Source: Octopus sinensis
Taxonomy: Eukaryota
DNA: 64,000 nt
Direction of reading: 5' to 3'
NCBI RefSeq assembly: GCF_006345805.1
Contig: NC_043006.1
Span: forward strand, 91,636,001 to 91,700,000
Shown here: positions 4,992 through 62,141 of the stretch, one piece after another
Position numbering within the stretch: the first letter of the stretch is position 1
Layout: every line of letters starts with the position of its first letter
Notes under the pieces: generated by a model
The model's input: the letters and a program-made list of their open reading frames with translations, nothing else
What the model was told of the DNA's origin: nothing
Databases searched by the model: none
Translations under genes and position numbers: made by a program

Positions 4992-5034
<43 letters not shown>

Positions 5035-5035
5035 A

Positions 5036-5066
<31 letters not shown>

Positions 5067-5082
5067 AAGAGAAGAGAGAGAA
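4850..5082. repeat. (AG)n/(AAAG)n purine microsatellite
   Basis: Read directly; it accounts for the RE-rich and SL-rich ORFs. Confidence 0.95.
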
Positions 5083-10193: not shown

Positions 10194-10560
10194 TCTCTCT
10201 ATATATAAACGGCAGTTTGTCTGTCTGTGTGTCTGTGTGTCTGTCAGGTTGTACCCTCACCCTGATTCTGATGAAACTTGACACACACATAGCCCAATGT
10301 CATAATTCAAAACTAACGCAGCGAAAATGTTGAAAAGTTCCCCCAGTTCTGAAAAAAAATCGATAAATTCGACATGGGGTCGAGAATCAGAAACACAAAC
10401 CACAGACTGTCTAGGGGACGCAACTCGACCTTTTTAACTCTCAAAAAAATTTACCATAATTTTTTTTCCATTTTTTTGCTATTTTTTGGCTATAACTCTC
10501 TAAAAATGCTTTATAGTTATTTCCCTTACAAACCCGAGCAACGCCGGGCGATACTGCTAG
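10194..10560 (+). mobile_element. Non-autonomous Helitron, about 367 bp
   Basis: Starts TC(TCTCTATATATAAA) after an A at 10193, carries internal GTCT repeats, has a subterminal hairpin CCCG-AGCAACGC-CGGG (10533-10548), and ends CTAG (10557-10560) before a T. No TSD, as expected. Confidence 0.8.
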
Positions 10561-10626
10561 TATATATATATATATAAATATATATGTATGTATATATATA
10601 TATATATATGTATGTATATATACATA

Positions 10627-11039
10627 TACTCTTTACTCTTTTACTTGTTTCAGTCATTTGACTGCGGCCATGCCTTTAGTCGAGCAAATCGACCCCGGGA
10701 CTTATTCTTTGTAAGCCCAGTACTTATTCTATCGGTCTCTTTTGCCGAACCGCTAAGTGACGGGGACGTAAACACACCAGCATCGGTTGTCAAGCAATGC
10801 TAGGGGGACAAACACACACACACACACACACACACACCACACACACACACACGCATATATATATATATATATATATATACGACAGGCTTCTTTCAGTTTC
10901 CGTCTACCAAATCCACTCACAAGGCATTGGTCGGCCTGAGGCTATAGCAGAAGACACTTGCCCAAGATGCCACGCAGTGGGACTGAACCCGGAACCATGT
11001 GGTTGGTTAGCAAGCTACTTACCACACAGCCACTCCTGC
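10627..11039 (-). mobile_element. Near full-length SINE-A with an unoccupied Tx1 target site (11006-11020)
   Basis: Reverse complement of the head (A-box-like TGGCTGTGTGG, B-box-like GGTTCAGTCCC), body, internal microsatellite and tail. Confidence 0.92.
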
Positions 11040-11548
11040 ACATACATATATATATATGTATGTGTGTATATATATATATATGTATATATATATTTATATA
11101 TACATATATATATATACACATACATATATAAACATATATATATATATGTGTGTCTGTGTGTATGTATATATACATACATACTCATGCATAAATACACACA
11201 CACTACACACACCCACACTGCACACACACGCGCATATACATATCTATATATGTATGAATCAAGGAGAAAGACGCCCGTCGTCATCCCACAAAGCAGACAT
11301 TATGACATCATGAGTTTCTGTGCCGATCGCTTGCTCTGGAAAGTCTTTGGCCTTGGATAAGAGGTGGCTCGACATTCCATGGAATAACCTTTTGTTGTTT
11401 AATCCTAAAGATTTGTCCATCTTTCATTCCCGATCACCAGAACAGAAAAGAAAAATGTGTCTTCATTTCAATCAAACGCTTCCAGCAGATTAGAACAGGC
11501 TTTCTTTCCCTTCCAATCATTTGTCAGCTGATAAGGTACCCTATTTGG

Positions 11549-14012: not shown

Positions 14013-14410
14013 ATTTCTTTACTGCCCACAAGGGGCTAAACATAGAGGGGATAAACAAGGACAGACAAAGGGATTAAGATGATTACATCGACATCAGTGC
14101 GAAACTGGTACTTTGTTTATCGACCCCGTAAAGATGAAAGGCAAAGTCGACCTCGACGGAATTTGAACTCAGAACGTAACGACAAACGAAATACCTGTTT
14201 CTATTTCTTTGCTACCCACAAGGGGCCAAACACAGAGAGGACAAACAAGGACAGACAAACGGATTAAGTCGATTATATCGATCCCAGTGCGTAACTGGTA
14301 CTTATTTAATCGACCCCGAAAGGATGAAAGCCAAAGCCGTCCTCGGCGGAATTTGAACTCAGAACGTAGCGGCAGACGAAAAACGTTAACGTTTCTGCCA
14401 GCTCGACGCC
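14013..14410 (-). mobile_element. SINE-B nested dimer bracketed by a 21-bp TSD
   Basis: Two tandem core+tail units. TCTCTACGAAATTATATATAT lies at 13992-14012 and 14415-14435. Confidence 0.9.
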
Positions 14411-16990: not shown

Positions 16991-17228
16991 TGATACCAGT
17001 CTTAATCCCACCTACATTTTCTGTACACAAACATCATCCGAATGTAACCTAGGTATACTGCGACAAACCTGAAACTCTTTACTGATTAGAACCCTTGCAA
17101 AAGCATTTCCCAGTAGGAAATAAAAGCCAATTCCATCTCTTTGAACAGCAACAATGTACAACCAGTGCATATTGCAAGAGTGAAAGCTTCTACCCGCCAA
17201 CTGTTATGTAATTAAAACTCTCAAAGTC

Positions 17229-17387
17229 GCAGGAGTGGCTCTGTGGTAAGTAGCTTGCTAACCAACCACATGGTTCCGGGTTCAGTCCCACTGCGTGGCA
17301 TCTTGGGCAAGTGTCTTCTGCTATAGACTCAGGCCGACCAATGCCTTGTGAGTGGATTTGGTAGACGGAAACTGAAAGAAGCCTGTC

Positions 17388-17443
<56 letters not shown>

Positions 17444-17643
17444 TTGTCCCCCTAGCATTGCTTGAAACCGATGCTGGTGTGTTTACGTCCCCGTCACCTA
17501 GCGGTTCGGCAACAGAGACCGATAGAATAAGTACTGGGCTTACAAAGAATTAGTCCCGGGGGTCGATTTGCTCGACTAAAGGTGGTTCTCCAGCATGGCC
17601 GCAGTCAAATGACTGAAACAAGTAAAAGAGTAAAAGAGTAAAG
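17229..17643 (+). mobile_element. Full-length SINE-A with an unoccupied Tx1 target site (17248-17262)
   Basis: GCAGGAGTGGCTCTGTGGTAAGTAGCTTGCTAACCAACCACATGGTTCCGGGTTCAGTCCC head, body, TA/TG microsatellite, tail ending in GTAAAAGA repeats. Confidence 0.95.
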
Positions 17644-18139
17644 TCATTATAAATGTTAGGCCACACAACCTTTGATATCTCTTGGTAATCTCACATTTAT
17701 AACAAAGCAAAAATGACATTTCTGAGACTATGCCTCCTTTTTTATAGCTACGAAATCTTTTAGAACAGTTACCGACTGACCACAACGCTCATCTAAACAT
17801 CGCAATGGAATATAACTCTCACACATGATGAAGTGCTGCTGATACAGAGATATTTTCAGCGTTAATTGCAACAATTATAGTCAAAACAAAGAGGAAATGT
17901 CACAACTGTTAGGAACTCTAAACTGGATGAATTATAAATTAAATTATATTGTGGGAGCAGATTCGGATGATTGGGTAAAAAGTTCGATTTAAAACTACAA
18001 GGTTTCCGCTTTGATTTCATTGCGTGGCAATTTCTGGGCAAATATATCAAAGACTCGAGTCAAACAATATTTTGTGAAATTTGACCGACGTAAACTCTGC
18101 CAAAGCCCATCCTACATCCATCCACCCATCCATCCGTGC

Positions 18140-20639: not shown

Positions 20640-23600
20640 AGGTGTATTCCGTTAAGAACGTATTAGAATACAAAATAGAGCTCGTTCACTCTTAGAATTA
20701 CCAGATAGCCGGCAGTATTATGGTATACCACCAATTCTAAGCTTAGGTATTCCTCGTTACGCATACACGTGTATGTATGTATATATGTATGTACGTATGC
20801 ATGTATGTATGTATGTATGTATGTATGTATGTATGTATGTATGTATGTATGTATGCGTGTATACATCTAGTTGAAATCCAGTAGACCCAATCAATGAAAT
20901 TATTTCATGAGCTGTTTGTAAACTCAAAGAGTCAGCAGGTATGAGAGGTGAATATATTTATTTAGCCACCTGCTGTCCTTAGCATTACGGCCGTTTCGCA
21001 TCCTTCATTATGCTATAATAACTTTAGTGTATAAGCCATATATCCCAATGTGGGGTGAAAATCGGTACATTCGAACAGAAGTACTTGGTAGCATGTTCCG
21101 CTGAATTAAATCTCCTTCTTCGTTTTGCATTGTACGACAACGAGGAAATAAGAATAAGTATTAGGAAAAGTACTGGAGGCAAAGTAATCAACTAAAGCCT
21201 TAAAATGCCACGCTCCAGCATGGCCACTGCCCGTTAACTGAATCCACTAAAAGACAATAGAAGAATATGACTCACATTAGAGTTAGAGAAACAATCCAAA
21301 CAGCAATTCAATTAGTAAACATTTATTTACAGATCATAAATTTTAAGTAATCTAGCTGAAACCTGGATTGATTGAATAGAAGATTGCATGACAAAGAAAA
21401 TTATGTTTAAGCAGATACTTTGCGAGCAGAAGCGATGGTGTTATTAGGAAGGAGACATACTTTTAAGAATTGCAGATTATTCTGTCTGAAGTAATTCTAT
21501 CGGTTGAATTTGTGGTTTTATGTAAGTATATCCAAGCGAAGCAATTCACAGTGCAGCATGGAATCGCTGATATGGAGATATACTGCTTTTGTCAAACGAT
21601 AAAATGCTGGAATTTGATTGAATTCCGTACTTAGTTGGTGAAAATTATCACAAGGAAACCATAGGATGTTATTCATTTATCCATGTGTAATTTTATGTAA
21701 GGAAAAATGTTTCTATATATTTGTATGCATTTATGTATCGATGGGCCTATAGATTTGTGTTATAATGTGGAATGCTTATATGCATACATAAATATGCATG
21801 CATTGTTGCATACATGAATATATACATTTAACTAAATATATATATACACACATGCATGCATACATGTACTGTATATATGTGTATATATGTATATGCATTT
21901 TAGTGAGAACATACAATTTATATGTAGGCAAATATTTACATATTGCTAGTGAGACATGTCAGTTAGTATCGTACGAGTTTGTATCTTTTGAAAACTGGAA
22001 ACTATCTTTATGTCTTTTAACTGTATAGCATCTTATTCCTTGATAAAGCGTCTCAGATGTTCTTCTTTTGGTGCACGGAAGAGAAGGAACGTAGATGAAT
22101 ATATAATTTAGTTTTATTCTCCTTCAAACTACCAGCAGCTCACAAATATTATCAGGCATTTATTTTCACCTAACGTTATCTCAAGTTTGTTGTTCCATAG
22201 CTATAAAGCGAACATATAAGCGACGAAAATGTTTCATCATTTAGTGCAACCGAGTTGAGGGTAGAGCTGATATTACGACGCTACCGCATCTTATCGCATT
22301 CAAAAGTGCTTTCGGCTTTAAACTCATTATTTCTTTATCGCCATCTTTTTTTTAGTTTACATACAAATAATATGCATCTGTGAGCGCAGTCACGGTTTTG
22401 TGTTTAAGAAGTTTGCTTGCAACCTGAATGTTTTCGGATTCAATCCCATGGCACTGCGCGTTGAACAAAAGTTATCCACTATAACATCGGCTTGGCCAAA
22501 GCCGTGTTAATGGAAATTAGTCGATCTAAACTACATGGAAGCCAGTTAGAGGGGTTGCTGTTGGGTGACAGACTTATTCCATCCACCTATTTGAAACCGC
22601 CGCTCAACCATGGCTGACTGTAGCAGGGTCAACTCTGTTACTTGGGTCGGATCTCTGGTCTGGATATAAGTCCCACCTTTCCCTGAACCAATATTGGAGA
22701 CCCTGTAAAAGTTATGGGTGGTTCCCTTCCTCCTCAGATTTGGCCATTAAAATATCGACCTCTCACCTAATATGAAACCATAGTGTCGAAGACAACTAAA
22801 CAACCTATGATGTCGAGAGACCGAAGAACTTATGCTGTTACTGAAATAAATATTTGTGAAAATACATGCAGTTAATCAAATATGTTCTTTATATACTCCA
22901 TATTTTGATATCTAGAATATATTTCAAGTGAATGTTCATAAAATCTGATCTGTCGTTTCTTGTACAACGCTTTGTGGTTTTCAAATAGCTTTGGTTTGAA
23001 TGTTTCAACACTTTGATGCATGTATGGATACGATGAATAATTAGTTGTAATCTTGTGTAGGACACTCAAAGTTAATCTCTGTTTCCAAGTATAAAAAATA
23101 ATGGATTTCACCACAACTTCTTCGTTTTCTAACTCTTTAATGTTATAATATTAAACCTGCACGGAATTACGATTGCCTTGGGAATTCAATTTGTTCTCAG
23201 ATCTGATCTGATAGCAGCGACAGCTATTTATCATCAATCGCGAGTCTTCATGTATTAAGTATGTTAGTCTTGTGATACGTAGATTTCTCTTAAGTTTCAG
23301 TTTAATTTTACAACCGAAAGAAAATCATCCGTATTCCTGTCATCTCTGCTTCTTTCTCTCGATACACTTGATCATCTTGAAAGCTACTTATCCAGCATTT
23401 TGACGCAAAGAAACGGTCTTGTTGATTTGAACATTTAGATTATCATATATTTAAATTACCAGACTTCTCATCAAAAGTATCAAGACCTTTCTTAGATGTT
23501 CTTGTTAAAATTTTGTTCAGTCGATCTTGCAGCATTTTTATAGGAAAGCAATGTCAGCGTTTAAAGTTGTATTATCTGTTACCGTACAAGGATGTAACAT

Positions 23601-26789: not shown

Positions 26790-27060
26790 TTGAATGCTCG
26801 TGGTTCGGCAATTCGAGTCATGATCGCGAGTTCTATTTCTGGCGGTACCTTGTGTCTTTGAGCAAGACACTTTATTTCACATTGCTCCAGTCCACTCAGC
26901 TGGCAAAAATGAGTTTGAAAGGGTCCAGCCTTGTTACATTCTGTGTCACCATGAGTCCCGCTGGGAACTACGTTAAAGGTACATGTGTCTGTGGAGTGTT
27001 CGGCCACTTGCACGTTGATCGGATCAACTGGAAAGCTTGTTGTCGTAACCGACGGACGAA
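26790..27060 (+). mobile_element. SINE-C: tRNA-like head plus a TTGTGTCTTTGAGCAAGACACTT core
   Basis: Degenerate A/B-box head followed by a GTGTCYTTGAGCAAGACACTT motif recalled from conserved SINE central domains. Single copy in the window. Confidence 0.55.
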
Positions 27061-35098: not shown

Positions 35099-35965
35099 TT
35101 TTACTTGTTTCATTCATTGGACTGTGGCCATGCTGGAGTACCGCACTGAAGAGTTTTAGTCAAACAAATAAAAATCACAAATTGTTTTTTTTAAAGTCTG
35201 CTATTTATTCTGTCGGTTACTTTTGTTGAACCGTTATGTAATGGGGGAGGGACTTAAACAAACCAATACCTATTTCTTTATTACCCACAAGGGGCTAAAC
35301 ACAGAGAGGACAAACAGGGACAGACAAACGGATTAAGTCGATTATATCGACCCCAGTGCGTAACTGGTACTTATTTAATCGACCCCGGAAGGATGAAAGG
35401 CAAAGTCGACCTCGGCGGAATTTAAACTCAGAACGTAACGGCAGACGAAATACGGCTACGCATTTCGCCCGGCGTGCTAACGTTTCTGCCAGCTCGCCGC
35501 CAATACCGGTTGCCAGGCAGTGAAGGAGGCAAACACAAAATCACACAGACATACACGCGTGCATACACACACACACACACACACATACAGACAGACGGAC
35601 ACACGCACACACACACACAAACACACACACACAGACACGCACACAGACACGCACACTCACACAGACACACAGACAGACTGACAGACATACACGCATTTAT
35701 AGCTTTCTTTCATTTCTCTTTTCTTGAACGTGTCAGTCATTAAACTGCGACCATACTGGGGCACCACCTTGGAGAATTGTCTTTGGTCGAACAAATCGAC
35801 CCCAGCACTTGGCTTTTTAAAGTTTCCTACTTATTCTATCAGCTTCTTTTGCCGAATCGTTAAGTTACGGGGATGTAAATACATTGACATCGGTTGTTAA
35901 GCGGTGATGGGGTACAAACACAAAGACCCACGCACACATAAGCACAAAGAGACTCATACATAAAT

Positions 35966-37739: not shown

Positions 37740-37907
37740 TGTTTCTTTATTACCCACAAGGGGCTAAACATAGAGGGGACAAACAAGGACAGACAAACGG
37801 ATTAACTCGATTACATCGACCCCAGTGCGTAACTAGTACTTAATTTATCGACCCCAAAAGGATGAAAGGCAAAGTCGACCTCAGCAGAATTTGAACTCAC
37901 AACGTAC
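37740..37907 (-). mobile_element. 5'-truncated SINE-B, 21-bp TSD
   Basis: ATTACAAAATGAATAAATATC at 37719-37739 and 37908-37928. Confidence 0.92.
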
Positions 37908-38004
37908 ATTACAAAATGAATAAATATCACGTGTCCATTAATCGCCAAGAATTTATTATATTTCAGTTCCCGGTTTCGCAGTTTCGAGTTTCACCAGCAA
38001 CTTT

Positions 38005-41234: not shown

Positions 41235-43408
41235 ACACACATACACACTCACACACACACACTCGCATGTGCTTCACAAGGCAATGGCCAGCCAGAGGCT
41301 AGAGGATACTGGTGAAGGTGTTGTGAAGTGTGATCGAAGCTGAATCCGAGGGATTGCGAAACAAACTTGTTACCCTCACGACTATATCTAAATAGAAGAT
41401 GTTTCTAGACCAAGACATATCGAATGTGTCTCCACGGAACGATTTATTTCATATCCATGTCATCCAAGCAGTTCGAATTTTTTAGCATATTTCCTCTATA
41501 AATTCAAACGTTACAATTTACATTTTCTGTTGTTTAGACATATTTCATTCCCCCTTGGAGTGAGTATTAAGCTTGTAGTGAGCCGAATTTGCGATTATAT
41601 CAACATTTTTCGCTGATAAATTATATCTAGGAAGTGACATGTTAGTATAACTGGCAAAGCACCAGTGAATTGGTGATGTTTCTAGATCAAGATATGTTTT
41701 AGAGTCTTGTTTGAAAATATTTCACTTTACTATCAATTATAATTCCATTAAGAAAGGCGTGAAGGACGCAACTCTAAATATAAATGTAAACAGTATTTGT
41801 ACCTACCGTAAGAGAAAGCAAACTTTGTCGTCGTATAAATTTAAACGCATCGATACTCAAGTATTCCGCGTAGATTAAATTAAGTTCGAATATTTTATCA
41901 AGCAAATCGTTATATTAATTGATGAACCGAATGGAAAATTGTTATTTCAGTTTTTCATTTCTCAGTCTTAACTAATATTAGAGTCATCTTTGGTAATCAA
42001 AGAACAAAGAATGTTTCCCACCTGTGTCCACAACTATGTACCACGATGTAACATAAAAATGTCGTTCTTGTATCACTGATAAAAATCTTACACATTGCGG
42101 ATTTCTTTCTAGACGAGTGACGCAAATTACCATGAGTCATACATTCTATTTTTCAAATTAGATAAAAGTGCTGTACGTTTAATTTAATTACAAAACATTA
42201 TAAGAAATAAAAGTAAATATCCCATCTTCATTTTAATGGAAGCTCTGTGAAAACCTTAAGCCACGCCGACTCCAGCAACCGTTCATTTATGTTCAACAGA
42301 TTCTCATCCATATGAAGAGTAAATGTTTTTTCCATCCATTATTGAGATTTATTCTCTCCTGATTTTTAGCTTTTCCTCATTTAACTTTTCATTTCCTGAC
42401 AAATTGAGAATTGAAATGATACTTCCATTGACAGGATTTCATTACTTTTTATTGACTTATTTCAGTGAAAATCTCCTTTAAAGATATTCAACAGCCTGCA
42501 GTAGGAAAACAAAACTAAAAACAAACACAACCAAACCAAACATAAAATCCAGAAGGCAAACGGGAGAGGAAGAAAGAAAAAGCATTAAAACACTTCACTA
42601 GAAATTTAATTTGTACTTTCGTTTTTTCCCCTTCCTTTGAAAACCGTTTTGTATTTTGTAAATTAAATTTTAATAGACATTTATTTGAATCCTATTTGAT
42701 GTAAGCCTCCCAGGGATTTCCTGTCGTCTTACTTCATCAGTTTTAAGTGGTGATGGGAATAATGTTCCTACTTTTATTGCCAGCCAGTGTCACTGTTGAA
42801 AGTTTATCTTCAATGATGTACACTAGCAATCTTTTACAAAAGTATTTTGTTATTAAACTACGTCTTTCATGACTTAATATTGTATACTCTTCCATTCATC
42901 ACTGGATGGATTAAATCACTATATCGCTAAATGCTTTTGATGTGATTTGTAATTGCTGAGCTGTATTGAAATTATCTGGCTTGGTTAATCAATATAACTG
43001 GTATAAGTTAGTTTTGTTATAAAGCCTTCCATCCAATGCGGCTCAGATTCAGCAGTGTTACCATCACTAGCATTAAATCTTATAGCATCCCAAGTTTTTT
43101 CAAGAACAATCTGTAGAGGACTGTTAACAAATATGTCAATTATATTATAAAGGTGACAGTATGGTGGAGTATAATAATTTGATTGCACCATGGCTGTTAT
43201 CTCTGCCAGTCGCGATCCCACATAGTAACTCTTTAGTTGGTTCATGACCCCACTCGCGACCCCACATAGTCGATACCAGTCGTGACCCCAAATCTCTCTA
43301 TGGTTTATGACGGGTGCATTTCATGATATATGGAGAGTCTAATGTGGACTGATATATTACATGCAGAGTATGTCACTGGAGTGGCTGTGTGGTAAGTAGC
43401 TTGCTTAC

Positions 43409-45641
43409 AGGTTGCTTCTGCGCATGTGCACGTCAGTGTTGCACTTGACACCGAAGATGTAAGACGTGTTTTTGAAAGCCGTCTTAATTTGAAGACTTTT
43501 GAATACTCAGCCGTAAGGTAAGAATTTTGGGGGTCTAGTGGGGACCTGTTGTATGTTGCAAATTATTTTTACAAGCACCAAGTCCTCACTAGGCTCTAGT
43601 CTGCCGGGAGCTGAATGAAAATATTATTCACTTAATTGTGAAAATTATTGGTTTGGTAGGCGTATCCTGCCAAACATTTGTTTGAAAATAGTGTTGTTCC
43701 TGTTAAGGAGTACCTAGAAGAAATTTAGAATGATTTTTTAACTGTCTTATAGTTGTGTTAAATTTTGGCCGTAACGGTGAATTGAGAAATTTTTTGAAAA
43801 TTCTTCTTGTGAATTCTAGTGGGCGTATCTCGCCCCCCAAAAATAAGAATAAGCCATTTGGATTACCTTTTTGGATTACCTTTCTGGAGTATTATACAAA
43901 AGATTCCCTGTCTGTGCTATTTGTGAGATTTTTCTTTTACTTTTCCCTTCCTCTATTATTTCTTTCTTTCTAAAAATTTTTGGTTCATTCTTTTCATTAC
44001 TTTAATTTAAGTTTCCTCCCCTCCCCTTTATATTGTTTTATTTTTATTCGGTTTAATTTTTTGGCAGACTGTCTTTTGAACTACTTTTGAACTGTTTTTT
44101 GACATGGCAGAGAAGGAACTTAAAAAGAATAACTCTGTCTTAGAGTGGGAAATTAACCCGCCTAAGCAATGGTTAAAAGATATGGAAGAGAAGACGATGG
44201 TACTTAGAACATATTCTAAAGTTCTTAATTCCATCACCGTCTTCCCAAAACAAGTCATAAAAAGTGAACTTAAAGAACATTTGTCTTCTATAATATATAT
44301 ATATATATATCCCGTGGTGTCAAACATGCAAGGAAATCCTGTTTTTCCCGTCATATTGTGGAAGAAAATTAATACGAGCCTGGATATGTGGGCTCCCCCC
44401 GGGCACCGAAGCGGATTGGATTGAAGATACCATCCGACGGGGACTGGGAGATGGCGGGCCTAGGTTCTAAATGTAATAGTATTGCCGGCGGTCGATTGGG
44501 AAGGGTCAAAAGCGATTTTGACCCGGTGGACCCCATCGGCCGCAACAGAACTGGTTTTTCCAGACTTCTTGAAAATGGCTGGCTGCAGGTATCCGGTGAT
44601 ACTTGAGGGACGTCCCCCAAAGTGACATTCCTTGCCTGCAGCCAGGCCACATTAAAAGGAACTGCCCCCAGGACCATGGTAAGGTCCTGGAACAGTCACC
44701 AGATACCACCTCCCCTACCCGGTCAAAGGGAGAGGTGGATGTGGTCGAGGAGGCTGAAGCCTCCTCAATTCAAAAAGGATTAAAAAGGAAGAAGGCGGGC
44801 AACAATAGTTGCCCGCCGAAGGAACCTAAGGCTTCGGGAGGCGAGGGAGAGTCTCCGGACAAAGCGGAAGGGCTCCACTCTCCCGAAGCCAGGAAGAAAA
44901 GAAAAAAAAGAAAAAAGAAGAACGGGTCATCTCAGCAGGGAGATGATGTGCCGACTGCATGTCCCGAAGTTGTGCCACCCACGGTGGAAGAAACCACACC
45001 ACCCTTAAAGATGATCAATTAATTATCTTTTTCTACAAGGGCGGGGAGGTGGAAAAAATAGTAGAAGAACTTAAAGAAACAGTAGATATGCCCTTCACAC
45101 GGGATCCCGAATGGCCTCCGCAGATAGCTGTGGAGGTCATAAGGTTTCCCTTGTGGGAAAGGCTTAAAGGATTTGGGGAGGAGTGTCGCATATGGCCGGG
45201 TGGCCCTTACACGACTTACATGTCCTATATGAGTGAGGCATGGGAAATGGTGGGATACAGGAACTCAAGCGGCATTGAAGATAATGATGAATATATCGAT
45301 GGATATATCGAAGAGTAGGAGGTAAAAGACCCTCGTTACAGAGTTTGAAACCTCACCTTATTGGACTATTTTGTAGTGGTTTATATCCTCAATTTTGTGT
45401 TTTAAGAAAGAAAAAAGAAAATATGTTAAGTAAGAGGTTTTAGTGCCTCCTCCTTGTAAAAGGTTCGAAACTTTATATTGATTAAAAAAAAAAAAATGAA
45501 AATATGTTTTCGAGAAAAATTCAATCGGCGGGTGTTGGGTTTCGTCTCTCATTTATTCATTATAATTTATTTTCATTCATTAATGTGTTTGTCCAGCCCG
45601 CAAAGCTCTTTGTACTGTCTATATGACAAATTTATGAAATA
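43409..45641 (+). mobile_element. ORF1-only non-autonomous Tx1-derived retroelement (half-Tx1), about 2.23 kb
   Basis: 15-bp TSD AAGTAGCTTGCTTAC (43394-43408 / 45642-45656), terminal AATAAA at 45638-45643, disrupted ORF1 homologous to the Tx1 ORF1, no recognisable ORF2. Confidence 0.88.
44104..45318 (+). pseudogene. Disrupted gag-like ORF1 of the half-Tx1 (zinc knuckle, basic low-complexity linker, C-terminal domain)
   Basis: EKTMVLRTY aligns with EKRTVVFKTF, and FPSYCGRKLIRAWICGLPPG with FPSYRGRRTSRIRIVEAPPE, of the Tx1 ORF1. A frameshifted C..C..PGHIKRNC knuckle lies near 44625-44670. Several frameshifts and an (AT)n insertion. Confidence 0.8.
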
Positions 45642-45999
45642 AAGTAGCTTGCTTACCAACCACATGGTTCCGGGTTCAGTCCCACTGCGTGGCACCTCGG
45701 GCAAGTGTCTTGTACTAAAGCCTCGGGCCGACCAAAGTCTTGTGAGTGGAAGTGGTAGACGGAAACTGAAAGAAGCCCGTCGCATATATATATATGTATA
45801 TGTATATGTTTGTGTATCTGTGTTTGTCCCTCCAACATCGCTTGACAACTGATAATGGTGTGTTTACGTCCCCGTAACCTAGCGCTTCGGCAAAAGAGAC
45901 CGATAGAATAAGTACTAGGCTTACAAAGTTCGACTAAAGGTGGTGCTTCAGTGTGGCCACCGTCAAATGACTGAAACAAATAAAAGAATAAAAGAATAT

Positions 46000-46410
46000 A
46001 TTTTCGTTTTTCATTCTTGTATCCGTTTCAGCCCAAAGGTTGTGGCACTGGACTGCGGCCATGATGGAGCACCCTTTCCAGGGTATAGTCGATCACATCT
46101 ACCGCAGTACTTATATTTGAATCTTGATACCTATTCCATCGGCTGCATTTGCTGAACCACCAATTGATGGGACGTTGACAAACCAATACAGGTTGTCCAG
46201 CGTTGGGGCAACAAACACACAGACACTCACACACACACATACTTACACACACACATATACGGGCTTCTTTCAGTTCCCGTCTACCAAACTCCCTTTCAAA
46301 GCATTAGTCGGGCCGAGTCTATGGCAGGAGACACTTGTCCAAGGCACCGCTCACTGGGACTGAAGCCAGGACAACATGGTTACGATGCGAGCTTCTCAAC
46401 CAAATAAGCC
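46000..46410 (-). mobile_element. Diverged SINE-A
   Basis: Reverse-complement tail, body (GGGCTTCTTTCAGTT..GTCTACCAAA) and head remnants. Confidence 0.75.
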
Positions 46411-47216
46411 ATATGTAAACGCTGGATTATTCCTTCCGACGTTTCATTTCCTTTAGGTTACATACTTTAAAAACTTCATGTAATTCGACCTTACAAGGAA
46501 ATGCGTTGACTACTTTGGTAAATATGCACGAAAAACTGTCAAAGTATTTTCTCAATTTCTTTGCGATATACTTGTTGCATGCACACGTTGTAACAGACAC
46601 AAGGAATAAAATGGGATATATTGTGATGATGCATTGTATAACACACACACAAATACACCCACACACACACAAATACACACGTAATTTTATTAATATGGTA
46701 TAGGAGAAGGGAGTGCGTGCATGGGCTTCGCAGAGCCTTCCAAACTATTGAGATGAATGCCTTTAACCGTGGCCAGCTGATGCCTGCAGGAACAAAATTT
46801 GCAAAGAGGAAAATATTTGAGTGCAGAGTTTAACGATGACCCTTGGAGCTTGGATGCATAATGGGAGATTAAAGGAGGAATGACAAGTGAATTGAGTCTT
46901 AAACAAGGAAAGTGCGCTGTGGATGAGGAGGATTTCTTTGTTCCCTGTACAAGTTCTGCTCCCATGTTGTGGCTGTTTATTTCAATTGTCACTTCATGTC
47001 ATATTTAATGAACAATGACATCCTTAATGGCTGCTCGCCAACTGCTCACATAATTCACTGATTCAATGACTAAGGATACACATGCACACTCGCACACACA
47101 CACATACACATGTGTATATATATATATATATATATATACATATATATTACGCCAGCTGAATTCAATTCGTTTCTCGTCGAAAGACGCCTGTTGTTATGTT
47201 CTGTTATTATTATTAC

Positions 47217-47250
<34 letters not shown>

Positions 47251-47329
47251 ATTATTATAATTATTATTGTTGTTGTTTTTTTTGTATTTATATTCGTATT
47301 ATTATTATTTTTTTTTGTATTTATATTCG

Positions 47330-47580
47330 TGTAACATCGTCCGTTTTTCTGTCCTTGTTTCGTATACATTCGATCCTTTTTCCAAGGAATCTAATGCTCT
47401 TAGCTTAGTTTTTCCTTGAGGCTGGCCAGATTGGAGCAATCTCAAGATAAATCAGCCGAAATTGCGAGGATGATCCGGTCGGTTCTTGACTGAAGATTAA
47501 AGGTTTCGAATGACCCGTCCGTGTTTTTTATGTATCGTCTATTTGGATATTTTGCGTTCTTGTCCCATTTTGTATTATAT
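47330..47580 (+). repeat. Unclassified interspersed repeat (longer copy of 11630-11760)
   Basis: Shared block, see the 11630 feature. Confidence 0.65.
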
Positions 47581-48451
47581 ATATATATATATATATAATA
47601 TATATATATATATACATATATATAAGTGACTGATTGACTTGCTCGCATTTCTCATTAATCAATTTTCTTCTGAACGCAACTCGACGCTCAGATGATACAT
47701 GTGAAATGTAGCGTCCACCGGAATCGAATCTAGAACAGTCTGGTTGGCAGCCAATACTTTCACCATTGCTACACACTTATCTGCTATTGCTATACGCTAA
47801 TCGGAAGATATGTGTGGAGTTTTTAAATACTTCAAATAACAGATTCTGATAAAGCTTTGAAAAGACAATTCGTTTCCACTATGGCTTTTGAACAATATGC
47901 AGCCCGGAAACAAATCTCTCTACGCAAGAAAACACTGTATATACAATATACACAGACGGTTATATACCGAAACTTCAATTAAATAGAGAGTTGAGAAAAT
48001 GAAAGTTTACTATCAATTGTTATAGGCGCAGGAGTGGCCGTGTGGTAAGTAGCTTGCTAACCTCACTGACTGAAGAGTGACTTTGCTTACCGTACTACGG
48101 TTTGGATGCGTTTTCTTCCCGGTAAGAATTTTGCTGTGTTGTTAATTGTTGAATTTCTACTACTGAAAATTTGTCTTTAAACGTTGCTGAACTGTCTTGT
48201 TCTCCGGTTTTACCGGGGAATAATTGGATAATTTCTTACCGTTGAACTGTTAACCATTGTGGCTTTTTATTTACGTGACTATATATAGTCCTGCCAGACT
48301 ATTTTCGTGCCCCTCCCCCGAATGGGGGTGGGAATTGGAATTTTTGAACTGCTTTTTTGAACTACTTTGGAAGAAAAACTTTCTATAGGTTTCCCAGTTT
48401 TGTGGGAAACCAATATTTGTAATTTTTGTGTTGTCTAATTTCAACAGAATA

Positions 48452-49856
48452 ATGTCTGTTGAAATTATTCACGAAAGTAGTGCTCTTGAGGAAAGCAATG
48501 TTAAAAAATTTTCTGCGGTAGCCGCAGTGGCTACCGAGAACATTGACATCAATGTCAATCAGCTCGTCGAGCTATTTAAAAGAATGCAAGAGGAGGGTAG
48601 TGATGTTAAAATATCACCCTCCGCCAGTATCGTGGAGACCGAGAAGCGGACCGTAGTGTTTAAAACCTTCTGTCCACAAAGCAGAAGGTTCAAACACTTT
48701 GAATAAAACACCATCGAGAAATGCCTGTCCCCGATTTGGAAGGACATCGTGTACGTCGCCAGGGGACGGGCATATGGCACTGTGGATGTCCGCTTCTCGG
48801 GGGAAGAAGTGGCCCGCGGGCATTCTGTGAACCCCCTAAAAACCAAGGAGGTGGTACTTTTCCCAAGCTATAGGGGACGCAGGACGTCCCGGATCAGGAT
48901 TGTAGAAGCCCCGCCGGAAGTAGATCCGGTAGAGGTAGTGGCCGCCCTGTTATATAAAAGGGCGAACAAAATTAAAATACTAGAAGTAACATGCTCTGCC
49001 CCTCTATTTTGGCTCGGGCGTAACATTAATATATTAATTCAAGGAACAGCGGAGGACCTGCAGCTCCTTCCTGAGAGGGTGCTCGTGGGCGAGAACGTAG
49101 CCCTCAGGGTACAGGTCGAAGGCCGAAAACCCACCTGTTACGCCTGCGGCAAAAAGGGCCACATTCGTGTAGACTGTCCAGACAAGCAAAAGAAACCGCA
49201 GACACCAGGCCCCTCAGATAATAAAAAAGTCCCTACCCTTGCAAACTCACCTACCCCTACAAAAACAAAAAATCCCACTCCTGCTGTTACGGTGCCAACC
49301 CCAAAACAGACTGAAGAAAAAACCCAGCCCTCGCACTCACAAACCCCTACATTATTAAAACCTCCCACCCCCCTAAAAACTGCGGCGCCTACCGAACAAA
49401 CTATTGCTACCCCAGACGATACCATGGAGGTATCAGAGGGGGGATTTACACCAGTTCGTAAAAGAATTCGTGCATCATCCCCGTCCACATCCACTACAAA
49501 AAATAATAAAAACAAAGACACACCACAGACACGGAAAAAAAAATCCCGCTCAACTGGCCCAGAAAAAGAAGACAAAAAAAGAAAATGAACTCATATTAAT
49601 TGAATTCGACACACAAGACAAATACATAAACGATATTGTGGTTCAGCATCAGTCAGCAAGACTGTACAACAAATACAAAGATCGAAATAGACACGCGTGG
49701 ATTGCGGAAACAACGTTCAAACAATTAAAAGACAGACACCCAAACGCCATCCGGCATATCGCGAACTTGCCGGACTATTTGAAGAAAGAGGAGAAAGAAG
49801 GGGCCCACAAACGTGTGGTGAGGTCGGCCCCCACCTCTCCAACGAAATGTAAGTAG
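48452..49856 (+). CDS. Tx1 ORF1 (gag-like nucleic-acid-binding protein with a CCHC zinc knuckle), disrupted
   Basis: ATG at 48452; in-frame TAA at 48704-48706, with the reading frame continuing into ORF 48749-49588; CYACGKKGHIRVDC at 49136-49177. A probable C-terminal domain sits in a shifted frame up to 49856. Confidence 0.85.
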
Positions 49857-49873
49857 AACTTTTACTTTTTGTA

Positions 49874-52800
49874 ATGGCTTCGCTTAACCTTGGTTGTTTA
49901 AATGTGCGTAGTCTGAGTTCGAAGTGGAAGCAGGCTTGTTTCCTCGACGACCTCAGATCACATGATATACATGTGATGGTTGCTACAGACACCAAGCTGG
50001 ACAGCCTACAAACCTTCTCGCCTCTCCTGAATGGCTACGAGAAAATCATGTCTCCTGGCCATACCGGAGGGCGAGGGGGCGTAGTGGTACTGATCCGTAA
50101 AGACTTGGCTCTACAGACAAGTACAGTCTATGTAGACCCAGAAGGTGGGCTGGTCGTCCTTGATGTGACATACAGCAGTAAGGCCTTCAGGTTGATCGGA
50201 CTCTATGCACCTTGTGCTAGAGGTTTCCAAACTGATTTTTATCGGCGCCTAGAGGGCTTTCTCGTGACGTCAAAGACTTTAGTGATATTAGGGGACTTTA
50301 ATGCTATCGTTGGCGTACACATCGATAGCGTTGGCTCGATCTATAGGAAAGTGAACTCACGTCTCGTGGATCTGCTTAAGCGGTTTCAGCTGACAGATCG
50401 TTACAGACTTGACCATCCGAACGTCCCAGAGTGGACCTGGATGAGTGGCGACGGAAGGTTCAAGTCTTATCTAGACAGGATAGTGATAAGAACTAGAGAT
50501 AAGTCTAGTTTTAGTTGTCCACAGCTCGTCCAGGTGCCCTATACTGACCATAGAATGGTCACGTGTAGACTGGACATAGATAGCACACTTAAGATAGGAA
50601 CCGGCTACTGGAAGCTGAACAAGTCTATTTTGACACGCGAGGCATACCGTAGCTGGATTAAGGTGTTAGTGCAGAGGGCGTTAACCGGAGCCGTGGTTAA
50701 TAACCGGTGGTGGTTCGCCCTCAAAAGAGCCATTCGATTCGAGTCCATTAGATTTAATAAACAACTAAGACTAGATAGGGCTAGAATAGAAGGGCAACTA
50801 GTTAAGAACTTAGAGGAGGCGTTGAGGTTGGGCTCTGCATCTCACATTTTAGGGGCGAGAACGGCATTAGACCGTCACCTCAAAACCAAACATGAGGGAT
50901 GTAGAGTTCGGGCTAAAGTACGAGCATTGGGCCGTGAGGGAATTAATGTTGCCGGATGGGCCCGTACGATAGAAACACAGCGTGGAAACGATGCCACAAT
51001 TGGGTCTCTTGTTGATGAAAACGGATGCACGATCAAGAAGCGGGACGAGATGTGTGAGGCACTTCACAAGCACTTCGCCGAGTTGTTCGGGAGGTGCGGG
51101 ACGCTGGATCATGGTGAGGCCCTTAGGGACTTCCTGTCTGGTGGCCTGCGCCTCTCGACACGAGAGGCTGAGTGCTGTGAAGGGCCAATCACAGCCGAGG
51201 AAGTAATCGAGGTGTTGGGCAAGTGCCCCGGGGAGAAGTCGCCGGGTCTCGATGGTCTGCTCTATGAATTTTACAAAAGTATGCCAGACTTGTTCGGGCA
51301 CCTGCTGGCTAGCGTCTACGCCAACTGGCAGCAGAATGGGAGAATTCCCAAGTCTGCGAGCCGGGGGGCGGTGACGTTGATCAGGAAGGACCCGAACAAG
51401 GGGGACGAGATAGGGAACTTCAAGCCCATAACTCTGTTAAACACAGAGTTAAAGATTCTGGCCAAGGTGCTAGCAAAAAGGTTGGCGCGGGTCGTGGACA
51501 AACTTGTCGGGGAAGCGCAAACGTGCGCTATCCCCGGCAGAACGATCTACGACAATCTCCACCTTATACGCTACTCCTTAGAGAGGGTGGGGAAGCTTTC
51601 TGGCGCAGGGGGAGCACTGGTACATTTAGACCAGTCCAAAGCATTTGATAGGGTCGACCATCGGTACTTGGCGGCGGTCCTCGGAGAGGCTGGCCTAGGC
51701 CCGACCTTTCGAGGTTGGATCGCTGCTTTGTATAGCGACATCGAGTCTGTAGTCAAGGTGAACGGTTCCTTTTCGAAGCCGTTCAGGATCGAGCGTTCAG
51801 TTCGTCAAGGGTGTCCCCTGTCCTCGCTCCTATACGTATTGGCTCTTGAGCCTTTGCTGCGGAAGTTGGAGGCACTAGGGGGCGCGCCGCATGATCTATG
51901 GTGTGGAAGAGGAGCTACGGCGTATGCGGATGACACCTCCATCATCGTGGCAGACGAAGGCCAGCTTCCAGTGGTGGAAGAGGCCATCAAAAGCTACGAG
52001 GCGGTGGCAGGAGCAAAGGTTAACAAGGACAAGTCGGTCGGTTTGCAACTCGGCACCTGGAGGGCCAAGCCGATGCCGTCCAATAACATCGTAGGGCGTT
52101 GGACGGAAGGTCCTGTTAAGCTGCTCGGAGTCTGGTTCGGGCCAGACCTCCAGATTGAGAAAAATTGGAGTAAGGTGGCCAACAAGGTGACCGCTCTAAC
52201 CCAGACCTGGTCTGGGCGGGCGTTATCCCTGCTAGGGAAGGCGGAGGTGGTGCAGATGTTTATAGCATCAGTAATCACCTACCGTCTGACCGTGGTGCCT
52301 TGCCCCGACTTGTGGCTGAACAAGTTGGAGAGAATCCTTTTCTGATTTTTGTGGAAAGGAGGAAAGCCACTTGTAAAGCGCTCTGTCTGCTGCCAGAAAC
52401 CGCTAAAGGGTGGGCTAGGGATGCCTTGGCTGAGGATGCGAAAACTCGCGTTAAGGTTGAGGCACCTCTGGCTTTACCTGGATGGAGAGCAGGTGTGGTC
52501 ACCGCACGTCCGGTTCTACCTTCCCCAGTTAACATACCTAACGGACATCGGTGCATGGATCAAGCGGAGACCTAAACTGAGTGAATGGCATTTGGAGTGC
52601 CGTCAGGCGCTCCAGCTACTATCTCGGGTGGGCAATGCCGGCAACAGGAGTTCCACCACGGATTTCTATAGCGGGTTAGTGGAGATTAAGTCCGAAGACG
52701 CCTTGGGGGAGACCCTGGGCTACGATGAAAATCAGTTGGTCAACCTGTTCCGGAGGACGTTCAGGCCGGGGTATCTGGATAATTACCAGAAATCCCTGGC

Positions 52801-53383
52801 CTGGCAGTGTTTCCGTGCGGCTTTACCTGTTCGCGACAAGCTGTCAAGGCACGGTAGTGCCGTCTCGCCGACATGCCCGCGATGTGAGCAGGATAGGGAG
52901 ACCGTCTTGCACGTATTCGTGGAGTGTCCGGAGTTATCGGGTCTGATAGCTTTTGTTGAACAACTGTTGTCAGTGATGGGAAGAGTACAGCTATCAGCTG
53001 AGACTATCATCGAGATTGTGCCGCCTCCTTTCCTTAACAGGGAAAGAAAGGCTTGTTTTTTCTGTGTAGTAGCCATACTGAAAGAAACAGTATGGAAGAC
53101 GCGTACGAAAGGTATAGTGTCAGGCACCTTTGTCTCCGGCCAGGGGTTGATTAACTTTTTTAGTTACCACCTCAGTAGCAAAATCAGGCTGGAGAAGAGG
53201 TGTCTGTCACGAGATATGTTTGGAAAAGATGGAAGCCTGTGGCATGCAGATGGGTATGTTTGGCACCAGGTAAGTGTGACCGGATCAGAAAGTAAAGGTT
53301 CTACCCGGATGGCTGGGTGTCCGTCCTTCGACATGATCATTAAAATTTTTAAACATTGTCTTCGTAAAATTCATTGTTTATAA
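49874..53383 (+). CDS. Tx1 ORF2: APE endonuclease, reverse transcriptase and C-terminal zinc finger; one in-frame TGA at 52343-52345
   Basis: LNVRSL, ILGDFNA, YLDRIV, TDHRMV (APE); KSPGLDG, QGCPLS, AYADD (RT); CPRC..ETVLHVFVECP. ORFs 49874-52345 and 52349-53383 are in the same frame. Confidence 0.95.
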
Positions 53384-53638
53384 TCTTATCCGTAATTTCA
53401 TTCGAAAATTGTAACTGTGTTAAGCTACTTCACCCTTTATATTTGTCTGTCCTTGTTTGTCCCCTCTTTGCCTAAATGGCAAATTATATGAAATAAAGTA
53501 GCTTGCTAACCAGACACATGGTTCCGGGTTCAGTCCCACTGCGTGGCATCTTGGGCAAGTGTCTTCTGCTATAGCCCCGGGCCGGCCAATTCCTTGTGAG
53601 TGGATTTGGTAGACGGAAACTGAAAGAAGCCTGTCGTA

Positions 53639-53669
<31 letters not shown>

Positions 53670-54306
53670 GTTTGTGTGTGTGTGTATGTGTTTGTGTGTC
53701 TGTGTTTGTCCCCCTAGCATTGCTTGACAACCGATGCTGGTGTGTTTACGTCCCCGTCACTTAGCGGTTCGGCAAAAGAGACCGATAGAATAAGTACTGG
53801 GCTTACAAAGAATAAGTCCTGGGGTCGATTTGCTCGACTAAAGGCGGTGCTCCAGCATGGCCACAGTCAAATGACTGAAACAAGTAAAAGAGTAAAAGAG
53901 TAAGAGTAAAGAGGTGACAAAATGATGCGACCAAAAATCGACAAAAAGATGTTCGAGTAAGATCGAGGAAAGGACATGAAGTAAAAGTGAAAAATCTGAG
54001 GTTAGCAGACGACAGGAAAACATGGACGAAACATGATTGCGTGTTTTGCTAGGGATGCACAGTGGGCATAGGCTATGATTTTTTTTTGCCAATAAGTGGA
54101 TTATATAAATATAACTTCTGACTCATGCAGCAGAACTAAATCATACGCCTCCGCTCAGTGTATTATATCTGGCCAGCAAAGTGTAAATACGCAGATAATA
54201 TTCAAATTCACTTTCTCACTTTTGTAACTATACGGAGTGTCTAGACTAATTGTTTACTTATGTAAATATTTGTGTTAATGTCTATATACTTCACCACAGA
54301 CACACA

Positions 54307-61970: not shown

Positions 61971-62141
61971 CAGGAGTGGCTGTGTGGTAAGTAGCTTGTT
62001 TACCAGCCACATGGTTCTGGGTTCAGTCCCACTGCGTGGCATCTTGGGCAAGTGTCTTCTACTATAGCCTCGGGCCGACCAAAGCCTTGTGAGTGGATTT
62101 GGTAGACGGAAACTGGAAGAAGCCCGTCGTATATATGTATA

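What the first reader, a model, noticed from the sequence alone, without database searches (positions are those of the whole stretch)
43394..53511. SINE-targeting Tx1 retrotransposon system: two different elements inserted at the same site in the SINE-A tRNA head
Seen: both elements interrupt SINE-A between its A- and B-box-like motifs at the same position (within 1 bp). Their TSDs are AAGTAGCTTGCTTAC (43394-43408 / 45642-45656) and AAGTAGCTTGCTAACC (48047-48062 / 53496-53511). Each TSD reproduces its own host's TTAC or TAAC variant on both sides, so the insertions are independent, not a segmental duplication. Both are in the same orientation as the SINE and end in ATGAAATAAA fused to the TSD. 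Empty sites at 11006-11020 and 17248-17262 show the pre-insertion state, so two of four perfect sites in the window are occupied. Known: the Tx1 clade includes sequence-specific families (Tx1L/Tx2L in Xenopus DNA transposons, Keno in U2 snRNA, DewA in tRNA arrays, Kibi/Koshi in microsatellites). Inference: this lineage uses a high-copy SINE as a self-renewing safe harbour and disables each host's Pol III promoter. I do not recall a described SINE-head-specific family, but could not check Repbase or Dfam.
Basis: partly seen in the sequence, partly recalled or inferred. Interest (0 to 1): 0.92.

Follow-up and report, generated by a model that had tools for sequence, protein, structure and literature searches.

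The report
LINE lineage inserting into a SINE head
Two unrelated-looking retrotransposons that share one 3' end have each landed at the same nucleotide of two separate copies of an abundant cephalopod SINE. This points to a site-specific L1/Tx1-type LINE whose target is another mobile element, which is a known strategy with a target class I did not find described.

Summary
A 2,233-bp element (e1, 43409-45641) and a 5,433-bp element (e2, 48063-53495) each interrupt a separate copy of the same ~450-bp SINE. Their 3' junctions are identical and their 5' junctions differ by 1 bp. Both lie in the SINE's orientation and carry perfect 15- and 16-bp target-site duplications.

The two host SINEs are about 87% identical and have unrelated flanks. 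Three further young copies in the window are uninterrupted.

e2 is a complete APE + RT + zf-RVT LINE of the L1 group with a CCHC ORF1; each ORF has one in-frame stop. e1 keeps only a decayed ORF1. It shares with e2 little more than the 3' terminus (CAAATT[A]TATGAAATA), so it was probably mobilised by the same kind of enzyme.

Relatives behave differently. An Argonauta LINE and a second SINE family in the window carry the same tail family but sit at unrelated sites. A limpet relative sits precisely inside U5 snRNA genes.

Best reading: sequence-specific endonuclease nicking followed by target-primed reverse transcription, as in target-specific Tx1 elements. Only two copies were available and genome-wide specificity could not be tested. 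Tx1 membership rests on indirect evidence.

This is a new member of a known kind, of moderate interest.

The parts
43376..43408 (+). Host SINE-A copy 1, 5' segment: head up to the insertion site, including the A-box-like TGGCTGTGTGG
   Evidence: Aligns with the uninterrupted copies.
43394..43408 (+). Left copy of the e1 target-site duplication, AAGTAGCTTGCTTAC
43409..45641 (+). e1: a 2,233-bp non-autonomous element. It has a decayed ORF1-like region (about 44104-45318, with frameshifts, an internal (TA)n run at about 44290-44310 and a CX4HX4C knuckle remnant). It has no endonuclease or RT. Its 3' tail ends ...GACAAATTTATGAAATA
   Evidence: ORF list and Pfam; weak tblastx match to e2 ORF1; three-frame translation; tail alignment.
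45642..45656 (+). Right copy of the e1 target-site duplication
45642..45998 (+). Host SINE-A copy 1, 3' segment: B-box-like GGTTCAGTCCC, body, internal (TA)n(TG)n and a 3' part ending (AAAAGART)n
48029..48062 (+). Host SINE-A copy 2, 5' segment
48047..48062 (+). Left copy of the e2 target-site duplication, AAGTAGCTTGCTAACC
48063..53495 (+). e2: a 5,433-bp full-length LINE of the L1/Tx1 type
48452..49588 (+). e2 ORF1, with a CCHC zinc knuckle and one in-frame TAA at 48704-48706
   Evidence: Pfam zf-CCHC, E=1.3e-5; frames.
49874..53383 (+). e2 ORF2: APE endonuclease (about 49874-50560), RT (about 51398-52135) and zf-RVT (about 52790-52933). It has one in-frame TGA at 52343-52345
   Evidence: Pfam Exo_endo_phos 6.8e-10, RVT_1 3.5e-26, zf-RVT 7e-10. 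Colinear with human L1 ORF2p over residues 6-819, E=2.9e-58. The catalytic N, GDFN, D and DH motifs are conserved, and the catalytic Glu is replaced by Asp.
53436..53495 (+). e2 3' tail: GTTTGTCC box, hairpin TTTGCC-TAAAT-GGCAAA, and terminus TTATATGAAATA
   Evidence: Alignment with e1, SINE-B and the Argonauta and JGI LINE tails, plus RNA folds.
53496..53511 (+). Right copy of the e2 target-site duplication
53496..53902 (+). Host SINE-A copy 2, 3' segment
11006..11020 (-). Empty target site in an uninterrupted SINE-A copy (about 10450-11041)
17248..17262 (+). Empty target site in an uninterrupted SINE-A copy (about 17226-17650)
61989..62003 (+). Empty target site with one mismatch (GCTTGTTTAC) in a third uninterrupted SINE-A copy

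Best explanation
A lineage of L1-group, Tx1-like non-LTR retrotransposons inserts by target-primed reverse transcription at one defined position in the promoter-bearing head of an abundant SINE (SINE-A).

Inferred mechanism:
1. The APE endonuclease of an e2-type ORF2 protein nicks the bottom strand opposite TGTGGT^AAGTAGC.
2. The freed 3' end (...GCTACTT-3') primes cDNA synthesis on the element RNA. That RNA is recognised through its 3' tail, a hairpin followed by ...TATGAAATA(AA).
3. The top strand is cut 15-16 bp downstream, after GCTTAC or GCTAACC. This produces the 15- and 16-bp duplications and fixes the orientation.

e2 is a recently dead autonomous copy. e1 is an ORF1-only derivative with the same tail, mobilised in trans or descended from a sister family.

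What is shown: the junctions, the TSDs, the domain content, the shared tail and the independence of the two events. What is inferred: the nick positions, that specificity resides in the endonuclease, mobilisation of e1 in trans, and that most genomic copies sit at this site.
For: - Identical 3' junction, 5' junctions 1 bp apart, same orientation and perfect TSDs in two SINE-A copies that are 87% identical and have unrelated flanks.
- e1 and e2 are otherwise unrelated at the nucleotide level. They share the anchored terminal CAAATT[A]TATGAAATA, a hairpin in the same place and a 5'UTR motif.
- e2 encodes APE + RT + zf-RVT and a CCHC ORF1. It is colinear with human L1 ORF2p, E=3e-58, and its nuclease motifs are intact apart from a Glu-to-Asp change that a multi-copy limpet relative also carries.
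- A relative with 32% identity (P0018, Patella caerulea) is inserted at one nucleotide position inside loop 1 of U5 snRNA genes in a tandem array. Precise site specificity therefore exists among this protein's relatives. U5 is listed among known Tx1 targets (PMC4494074).
- Chance is unlikely. For random insertion, the probability that a second insertion hits the same position (within 1 bp) and orientation of one of 5 copies in about 56 kb is about 1e-4. This is my own calculation.
- Tx1 elements targeting other transposons are established (PMC4494074, PMC4640811). The endonuclease is described there as the main determinant of target choice.
Against: - Only two copies were seen. No further copy of either family could be retrieved, so the fraction of genomic copies at this site is unknown.
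- The nearest relatives carrying the same tail family are not in SINE-A heads. These are the Argonauta LINE (L002), the metagenome contig L005, and SINE-B copies in the window, one of which has a 20-21-bp TSD at an unrelated site.
- Three of the five young sites are empty, including two perfect ones.
- Two occupied sites about 2 kb apart could reflect a regional effect rather than sequence specificity.
- Tx1-clade membership was not shown by phylogeny.
Confidence: 0.65

Rival explanations
1. The preference is loose rather than true SINE specificity. The endonuclease recognises only a short motif around the nick, a few bases as with L1's TTTT/AA. SINE-A heads are hit repeatedly simply because they are the most numerous carriers of that motif.
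For: - Sister elements with the same tail family insert at unrelated sites and also make long TSDs.
- The 15-16-bp TSDs resemble those of L1, not the 4-bp TSD of the strictly specific limpet relative.
- SINEs make up about 11.6% of an octopus genome (PMC13282606), so a motif inside one would dominate the pool of sites.
Against: - The 3' junction is identical to the base in both events, and the second-strand cut is also within 1 bp.
- Three-mismatch searches for the junction sequence in the 64-kb window find only one other match, in an unrelated repeat.
Confidence: 0.2
2. Integration is guided by the Pol III machinery or by chromatin. The element is tethered to TFIIIC/TFIIIB, or to open chromatin on transcriptionally active SINE-A copies, as Ty3 and the Dictyostelium TRE elements are at tRNA genes.
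For: - The site lies between the A- and B-box-like motifs.
- Two occupied copies lie within about 5 kb of each other, which could indicate a locally active or accessible region.
Against: - The known tethered elements insert at fixed distances outside tRNA genes, not at one nucleotide inside them (established knowledge).
- Nucleotide-exact junctions and a fixed orientation are what a sequence-specific nick predicts.
- The limpet relative is equally exact inside a Pol II-transcribed snRNA gene.
Confidence: 0.08
3. Coincidence or artefact. The pattern arises from two unrelated nested insertions by non-specific LINEs, a segmental duplication, gene conversion between SINE copies, or a composite SINE-LINE-SINE unit that moves as a whole.
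For: - Nested LINE-in-SINE insertions are common in a genome that is about 13% LINE and about 12% SINE (PMC13282606).
- The scan looked at many windows.
Against: - e1 and e2 differ throughout, so one cannot be a copy or a conversion product of the other.
- The flanks are unrelated.
- Uninterrupted copies show the contiguous, unduplicated site.
- A composite that moves as a unit would still require two original hits at the same site.
- The chance probability is about 1e-4 per pair. It is lower still given that both elements carry the same rare tail variant.
Confidence: 0.03

Closest known systems
Target-specific Tx1-clade LINEs that insert into other transposons: Tx1L in the piggyBac-type Tx1D of Xenopus, Tx1-Mar in Mariner-N4_AMi, Tx1-9_AMi in Harbinger elements, and Tx1-8_Crp and Tx1-4_AMi in LTR elements of crocodilians (PMC4494074)
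   Same: - An APE-type LINE of the L1 group with a CCHC ORF1.
- Insertion at a defined position and orientation of a multicopy mobile element.
- A non-autonomous partner sharing the target, as SINEU does with Tx1-Mar.
   Different: - The target here is a SINE, inside its Pol III promoter region. I found no such target in the papers searched.
- The TSDs are long (15-16 bp).
- Specificity rests on two copies, whereas those families were assessed on hundreds.
Small-RNA-gene-specific Tx1 elements: Keno in U2, and the U5- and 5S-specific families (PMC4494074). The U5-specific limpet element found here (L128) belongs with these.
   Same: - Protein architecture; 32% identity to the limpet element over about 810 residues.
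- Nucleotide-exact insertion within a short structured-RNA gene sequence.
- The same Glu-to-Asp change at the catalytic position.
   Different: - Those targets are functional host genes in tandem arrays, and the limpet TSD is 4 bp (TTAC).
- Here the target is a dispersed parasitic element.
Human and vertebrate L1
   Same: - ORF2 is colinear (APE, linker, RT, C-terminal Cys-rich domain), E=3e-58.
- TSDs of about 15 bp, and a bottom-strand nick that leaves a TT 3' end able to pair with terminal A's of the RNA.
   Different: - ORF1 has a CCHC knuckle rather than the Transposase_22 type.
- There is no poly(A) tail. The 3' end is a defined hairpin-plus-GAAATA tail shared with SINEs, which is the 'stringent' type.
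- The insertion site is a long unique sequence, not TTTT/AA.
HAL1-like ORF1-only derivatives of LINEs
   Same: e1 keeps an ORF1 and the 3' tail but has no ORF2.
   Different: e1's ORF1 is decayed, and the family could not be sampled beyond this one copy.

Membership tests
Non-LTR retrotransposon, L1 group | N-terminal apurinic-like (APE) endonuclease in ORF2 | tested here: met
   Pfam Exo_endo_phos, E=6.8e-10. It aligns with L1-EN with N, Y, GDFN, D and DH conserved, and with Glu43 replaced by Asp. The R1-clade endonucleases in the PDB were not hit.
Non-LTR retrotransposon, L1 group | LINE-type reverse transcriptase colinear with L1 ORF2p, followed by a C-terminal Cys-rich domain | tested here: met
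   RVT_1 3.5e-26 and zf-RVT 7e-10. Human L1 ORF2p aligns over residues 6-819, E=2.9e-58.
Tx1 clade (within the L1 group) | RT phylogeny places the element with Tx1 references rather than with L1 proper (RTclass1/Repbase) | not testable with these tools
   No labelled Tx1 sequence was obtainable, and cluster names were uninformative. The support is indirect only: L1-Tx1 is the only L1-group class among the recently active LINE classes listed for O. vulgaris (PMC13282606), and a close-ish relative is U5-specific.
Tx1 clade (within the L1 group) | Type I ORF1 (RRM plus CCHC knuckle) | tested here: inconclusive
   zf-CCHC was found, E=1.3e-5. No RRM reached threshold in Pfam. Type I variants are described as consistent with Tx1 in PMC5203782.
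Target-specific LINE (criterion of PMC4494074) | More than 20% of copies are flanked by the same repeat at the same position | tested here: inconclusive
   2 of 2 copies in the window meet it. No other copy could be retrieved.
Target-primed reverse transcription products | Target-site duplication, a constant 3' junction and a variable 5' junction | tested here: met
   Perfect 15- and 16-bp TSDs. The 3' junction is identical and the 5' junction differs by 1 bp.
tRNA-derived SINE (host element, SINE-A) | tRNA-like head with A and B boxes; dispersed copies with individual flanks | tested here: inconclusive
   Five dispersed copies of about 450 bp with different flanks. TGGCTGTGTGG and GGTTCAGTCCC resemble the A and B boxes by eye. 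ARAGORN finds no tRNA, and no Rfam tRNA match appears even at E<=10.
Pol III-tethered integrators (Ty3, Dictyostelium TRE type) | Insertion at a fixed distance outside the Pol III gene, independent of local sequence | tested here: not met
   The insertion is inside the head at one nucleotide position.

The most novel reading that the evidence does not exclude
The e1/e2 lineage may be an obligate 'parasite of a parasite'. Under this reading nearly all of its copies sit in the Pol III promoter of one SINE family, and its occupancy is high enough (2 of 5 young copies locally) to silence a measurable share of potential SINE-A source copies. LINE and SINE lineages would then interact antagonistically within one genome, while a sister LINE with the same tail family drives a different SINE (SINE-B). 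This would be a concrete, countable case for the 'transposon ecology' ideas proposed for octopus genomes (PMC12988792).
Probability: 0.15. Interest if true: 0.7.

Novelty: new member of a known kind. Interest (0 to 1): 0.42.

Why it matters
If genome-wide data confirm it, this adds SINEs to the targets used by sequence-specific APE-type LINEs. More precisely, it adds the promoter head of a SINE.

- It would give a natural endonuclease with a long recognition site of about 15-20 bp that differs from those of its close relatives (U5 snRNA for one, apparently unconstrained sites for others). That is useful for working out how APE domains acquire specificity.
- It would provide a clean system for measuring interactions between mobile-element families in cephalopod genomes, where SINE and LINE expansions are much discussed.

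It does not change the general picture. Tx1-type elements that live inside other transposons are well documented.

Tried and rejected
**More copies of e1 and e2**
- Protein searches with the ORF2 N-terminal and C-terminal parts found only relatives of 70% identity or less.
- The exact ORF2 product is not on record.
- Contigs of the relatives either stop before the 3' end (L001, L003, L004, L129) or end in a different context (L002, L005, L006).
- A junction pattern in viral contigs found nothing.

**Naming the clade**
- Two cluster look-ups of 20 representative relatives returned no informative names.

**tRNA identity of the SINE head**
- ARAGORN and Rfam found nothing, and the fold is no better than shuffled sequence. 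I therefore could not say whether a real tRNA gene carries the site. There is no tRNA gene in the window.

**A target-derived leader at the element 5' ends**
- e2 positions 21-40 resemble the SINE-A head (TTGCTTACC...), but only at p of about 0.06 against shuffles. e1 gives p of about 0.4. I do not count this as evidence.

**A third junction-like match**
- The match at 26862-26880 lies in an unrelated repeat.

**Hypotheses rejected**
- Segmental duplication, gene conversion and a composite unit.


Full report
**1. The observation**

- AAGTAGCTTGCTTAC flanks a 2,233-bp insert, e1 (43409-45641).
- AAGTAGCTTGCTAACC flanks a 5,433-bp insert, e2 (48063-53495).

A search for AAGTAGCTTGCTWAC with up to two mismatches returns seven sites, against 0.24 expected from shuffles:
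- the four TSD copies;
- two perfect uninterrupted sites (11006-11020 on the minus strand, 17248-17262 on the plus strand);

Both inserts end ...TATGAAATAAA|GTAGC, and the 19-mer across this junction occurs exactly twice. Two A's are ambiguous between element and duplication. Relatives of the element end in GAAATA, so the full 15- and 16-bp duplications are the likelier reading.

**2. The host element**

Joining the flanks of each insert rebuilds a repeat that is colinear with three uninterrupted copies. It consists of:
- a head with A-box-like TGGCTGTGTGG and B-box-like GGTTCAGTCCC;
- a body;
- an internal (TA)n(TG)n tract;
- a 3' part of about 200 bp ending in (AAAAGAGT)n.

The five young copies are 83-94% identical in the head and body, and each has its own flanks. 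Five older, more diverged copies in the window have degenerate sites and are unoccupied.

The head is too decayed to be called a tRNA. ARAGORN finds nothing, there is no Rfam tRNA match at E<=10, and the fold is no better than shuffles. 'tRNA-derived' therefore rests on the box motifs and on what is generally known of cephalopod SINEs.

**3. The two inserts**

e2 is a complete LINE.
- ORF1 (48452-49588) has a CCHC knuckle and one in-frame TAA at 48704.
- ORF2 (49874-53383) has APE endonuclease, RT and zf-RVT domains and one in-frame TGA at 52343.
- ORF2 aligns colinearly with human L1 ORF2p over residues 6-819, E=2.9e-58. R2 proteins match only in the RT domain, and the R1-clade endonucleases in the PDB do not match.
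- The nuclease motifs are intact, except that the catalytic Glu is Asp. A multi-copy limpet relative shares this change.

e1 has no endonuclease or RT. It contains a decayed ORF1-like region with a knuckle remnant, interrupted by frameshifts and a (TA)n run.

e1 and e2 have no BLAST-level nucleotide similarity. They do share:
- the anchored 3' terminus (e1 GACAAATT-TATGAAATA, e2 GGCAAATTATATGAAATA);
- a hairpin just upstream of it;
- a GTTTGTCC box;
- a TTGAACTRCTTTT motif before ORF1.

e1 is therefore best read as an ORF1-only relative that depends on an e2-type ORF2 protein. The two events are independent insertions, but they probably sample one enzyme lineage.

**4. Independence and chance**

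The inserts differ throughout. The host SINEs are 86.6% identical, and the 2-kb flanks outside the hosts give no hits to each other. This excludes segmental duplication, gene conversion and a copied composite.

For random insertion, the chance that a second event hits the same position (within 1 bp) and orientation in one of five copies within about 56 kb is about 1e-4 (my calculation). It is lower still because both elements carry the same unusual tail variant. Even allowing for many scanned windows, chance is a poor explanation.

**5. Relatives elsewhere**

The closest proteins come from cephalopod-like contigs.
- A full-length LINE in Argonauta hians (L002, 54-58% identity) ends ...CCCTTGTGGCTAATAAAAGAAATAA followed by (TTA)4 and unrelated DNA.
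- A metagenome contig (L005) ends ...GGCCAATAAAAGAAATCA followed by a long (TTA)n.

Within the window, a second SINE family (SINE-B; 14041-14320, about 35300-35600, about 37769-37960, all on the minus strand) carries the same tail family...GTTTGTCCCCTCTATGTTTAGCCCCTTGTGGGTAATAAAGAAATA. One copy has a 20-21-bp TSD at an unrelated site.

The wider lineage therefore has a 'stringent' hairpin-plus-GAAATA tail, drives SINEs, makes long TSDs and is not generally tied to SINE-A. The e1/e2 branch has a changed hairpin and, so far, only SINE-A sites.

A more distant relative (P0018, 32% identity over about 810 residues, Patella caerulea) sits in a roughly 3.4-kb tandem array of U5 snRNA genes. It interrupts loop 1 of U5 at CGCCTTTTAC|...|TTACTAAAG with a 4-bp TSD, seen in at least two copies. 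Nucleotide-exact target specificity thus occurs among this protein's relatives, and U5 is listed among known Tx1 targets (PMC4494074).

**6. Clade**

L1-group membership was tested and met. Tx1 membership is inferred from four observations:
- a Type I-like ORF1 with a CCHC knuckle, described as consistent with Tx1 in PMC5203782;
- the zf-RVT domain;
- 'L1-Tx1' being the only L1-group class among the recently active LINE classes listed for Octopus vulgaris, with 13 families and 421 insertions (PMC13282606);
- the U5-specific relative.

No labelled Tx1 reference could be obtained, so no tree was made.

**7. Mechanism**

The most economical account is target-primed reverse transcription after a sequence-specific first nick.
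1. The bottom strand is cut opposite TGTGGT^AAGTAGC.
2. The exposed ...CTACTT-3' pairs with the terminal A's of the RNA and primes cDNA synthesis.
3. The top strand is cut 15-16 bp downstream.

This explains the constant 3' junction, the 1-bp play at the 5' junction, the TSD length and the fixed orientation. That the endonuclease is the main determinant of target choice is stated for this group in PMC4494074 (citing Takahashi and Fujiwara 2002, and Christensen et al. 2000 for Tx1L). Here it is inferred, not shown.

Splitting the A- and B-box-like motifs by kilobases should inactivate the host SINE's internal promoter. This is also inference, from Pol III promoter biology.

**8. Rival explanations**

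- A short-motif preference amplified by SINE-A abundance is the main rival, at about 0.2. It is favoured by the unconstrained behaviour of sister elements and by the L1-like TSDs.
- Tethering to Pol III factors or to open chromatin is possible, at about 0.08. It would also explain why two occupied copies lie about 2 kb apart. It predicts less exact junctions than those observed.
- Coincidence or rearrangement is about 0.03.

**9. Novelty**

Tx1-clade families that target DNA transposons, LTR elements, snRNA and 5S genes, satellites and microsatellites are documented (PMC4494074, PMC4640811).

Full-text searches for a LINE that targets a SINE found nothing relevant. Recent octopus repeat papers do not mention it. 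Repbase and Dfam could not be consulted, so prior annotation cannot be excluded.

I rate this a new member of a known kind.

**10. What is missing**

The decisive genome-wide count could not be run because no octopod genome other than isolated loci was reachable. It is straightforward for anyone who holds the assembly.

Noticed in passing
window 14041-14320 (-), about 35300-35600 (-), about 37769-37960 (-): A second, clearly tRNA-like SINE family (SINE-B: GGCGAGCTGGCAGAAACGTTAGCACGCC...GAGTTCAAATTCCGCCGAGGTCGAC...). Its 3' tail (...GTTTGTCCCCTCTATGTTTAGCCCCTTGTGGGTAATAAAGAAATA) is homologous to the tails of e2 and of the Argonauta and metagenome LINE relatives. This looks like a LINE-SINE partnership through a shared 'stringent' tail in an L1/Tx1-type lineage. 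The copy at 37769 is 5'-truncated and has a 20-21-bp TSD (GATATTTATTCATTTTGTAAT). The copies at 14041 and 14231 form a head-to-tail pair.
   Followed up: partly
L128 (Patella caerulea, JAZGQO010000002.1) 2690-2800, 14180-14340, 17590-17760, 21975-22085: A LINE 32% identical to e2 ORF2 is inserted at one nucleotide position in loop 1 of U5 snRNA genes within a roughly 3.4-kb tandem array. The TSD is TTAC. At least 11 near-identical annotated copies carry consecutive locus tags. Its 3' UTR also contains CATGAAATAAA, 18 nt before the end.
   Followed up: partly
L002 (Argonauta hians) 1200-1350 (+) and 7380-7540 (-): Two copies of a tRNA-like SINE whose tail (CCCTTGTGGCTAATAGAGAAATCTA) matches the tail of the full-length LINE in the same locus (about 1559-7187). 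The same LINE-SINE tail sharing therefore occurs in another octopod.
   Followed up: no
window 49994-50002 (ORF2 codons 41-43); P0018: The catalytic Glu of the APE domain (QET in most relatives) is Asp in e2 (TDT) and in the U5-specific limpet element (QDT). In this small alignment these are the two elements inserted at defined sites (for e2, two copies only). This may be coincidence.
   Followed up: no
window 48083-48102 (e2 positions 21-40): The 5' end of e2 contains TTGCTTACCGTACTACGGTT, which resembles the uninterrupted SINE-A target TTGCTTACCAACCACATGGTT in the TTAC variant rather than its own host's TAAC. The first 9 nt of e1 (AGGTTGCTT) resemble AGCTTGCTT of the target. The shuffle tests give p of about 0.06 and about 0.4, so this is not significant. 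It is worth checking on family consensus sequences as a possible target-derived leader.
   Followed up: partly
window 49404-49856 and 44959-45318: In both e2 and e1, the Lys-rich end of ORF1 is followed, in a different reading frame, by an open stretch beginning with a similar short motif (e2 ELILIEF..., e1 DQLIIFFY...). This could be a frameshifted extra ORF1 domain or chance. No Pfam match.
   Followed up: no
window 43376-53902: The two occupied SINE-A copies lie only about 2 kb apart, while the three empty ones are 8-32 kb away. If the LINE families are low-copy genome-wide, this local clustering is unexplained. Possible causes are regional accessibility or simply how the window came to notice.
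   Followed up: no
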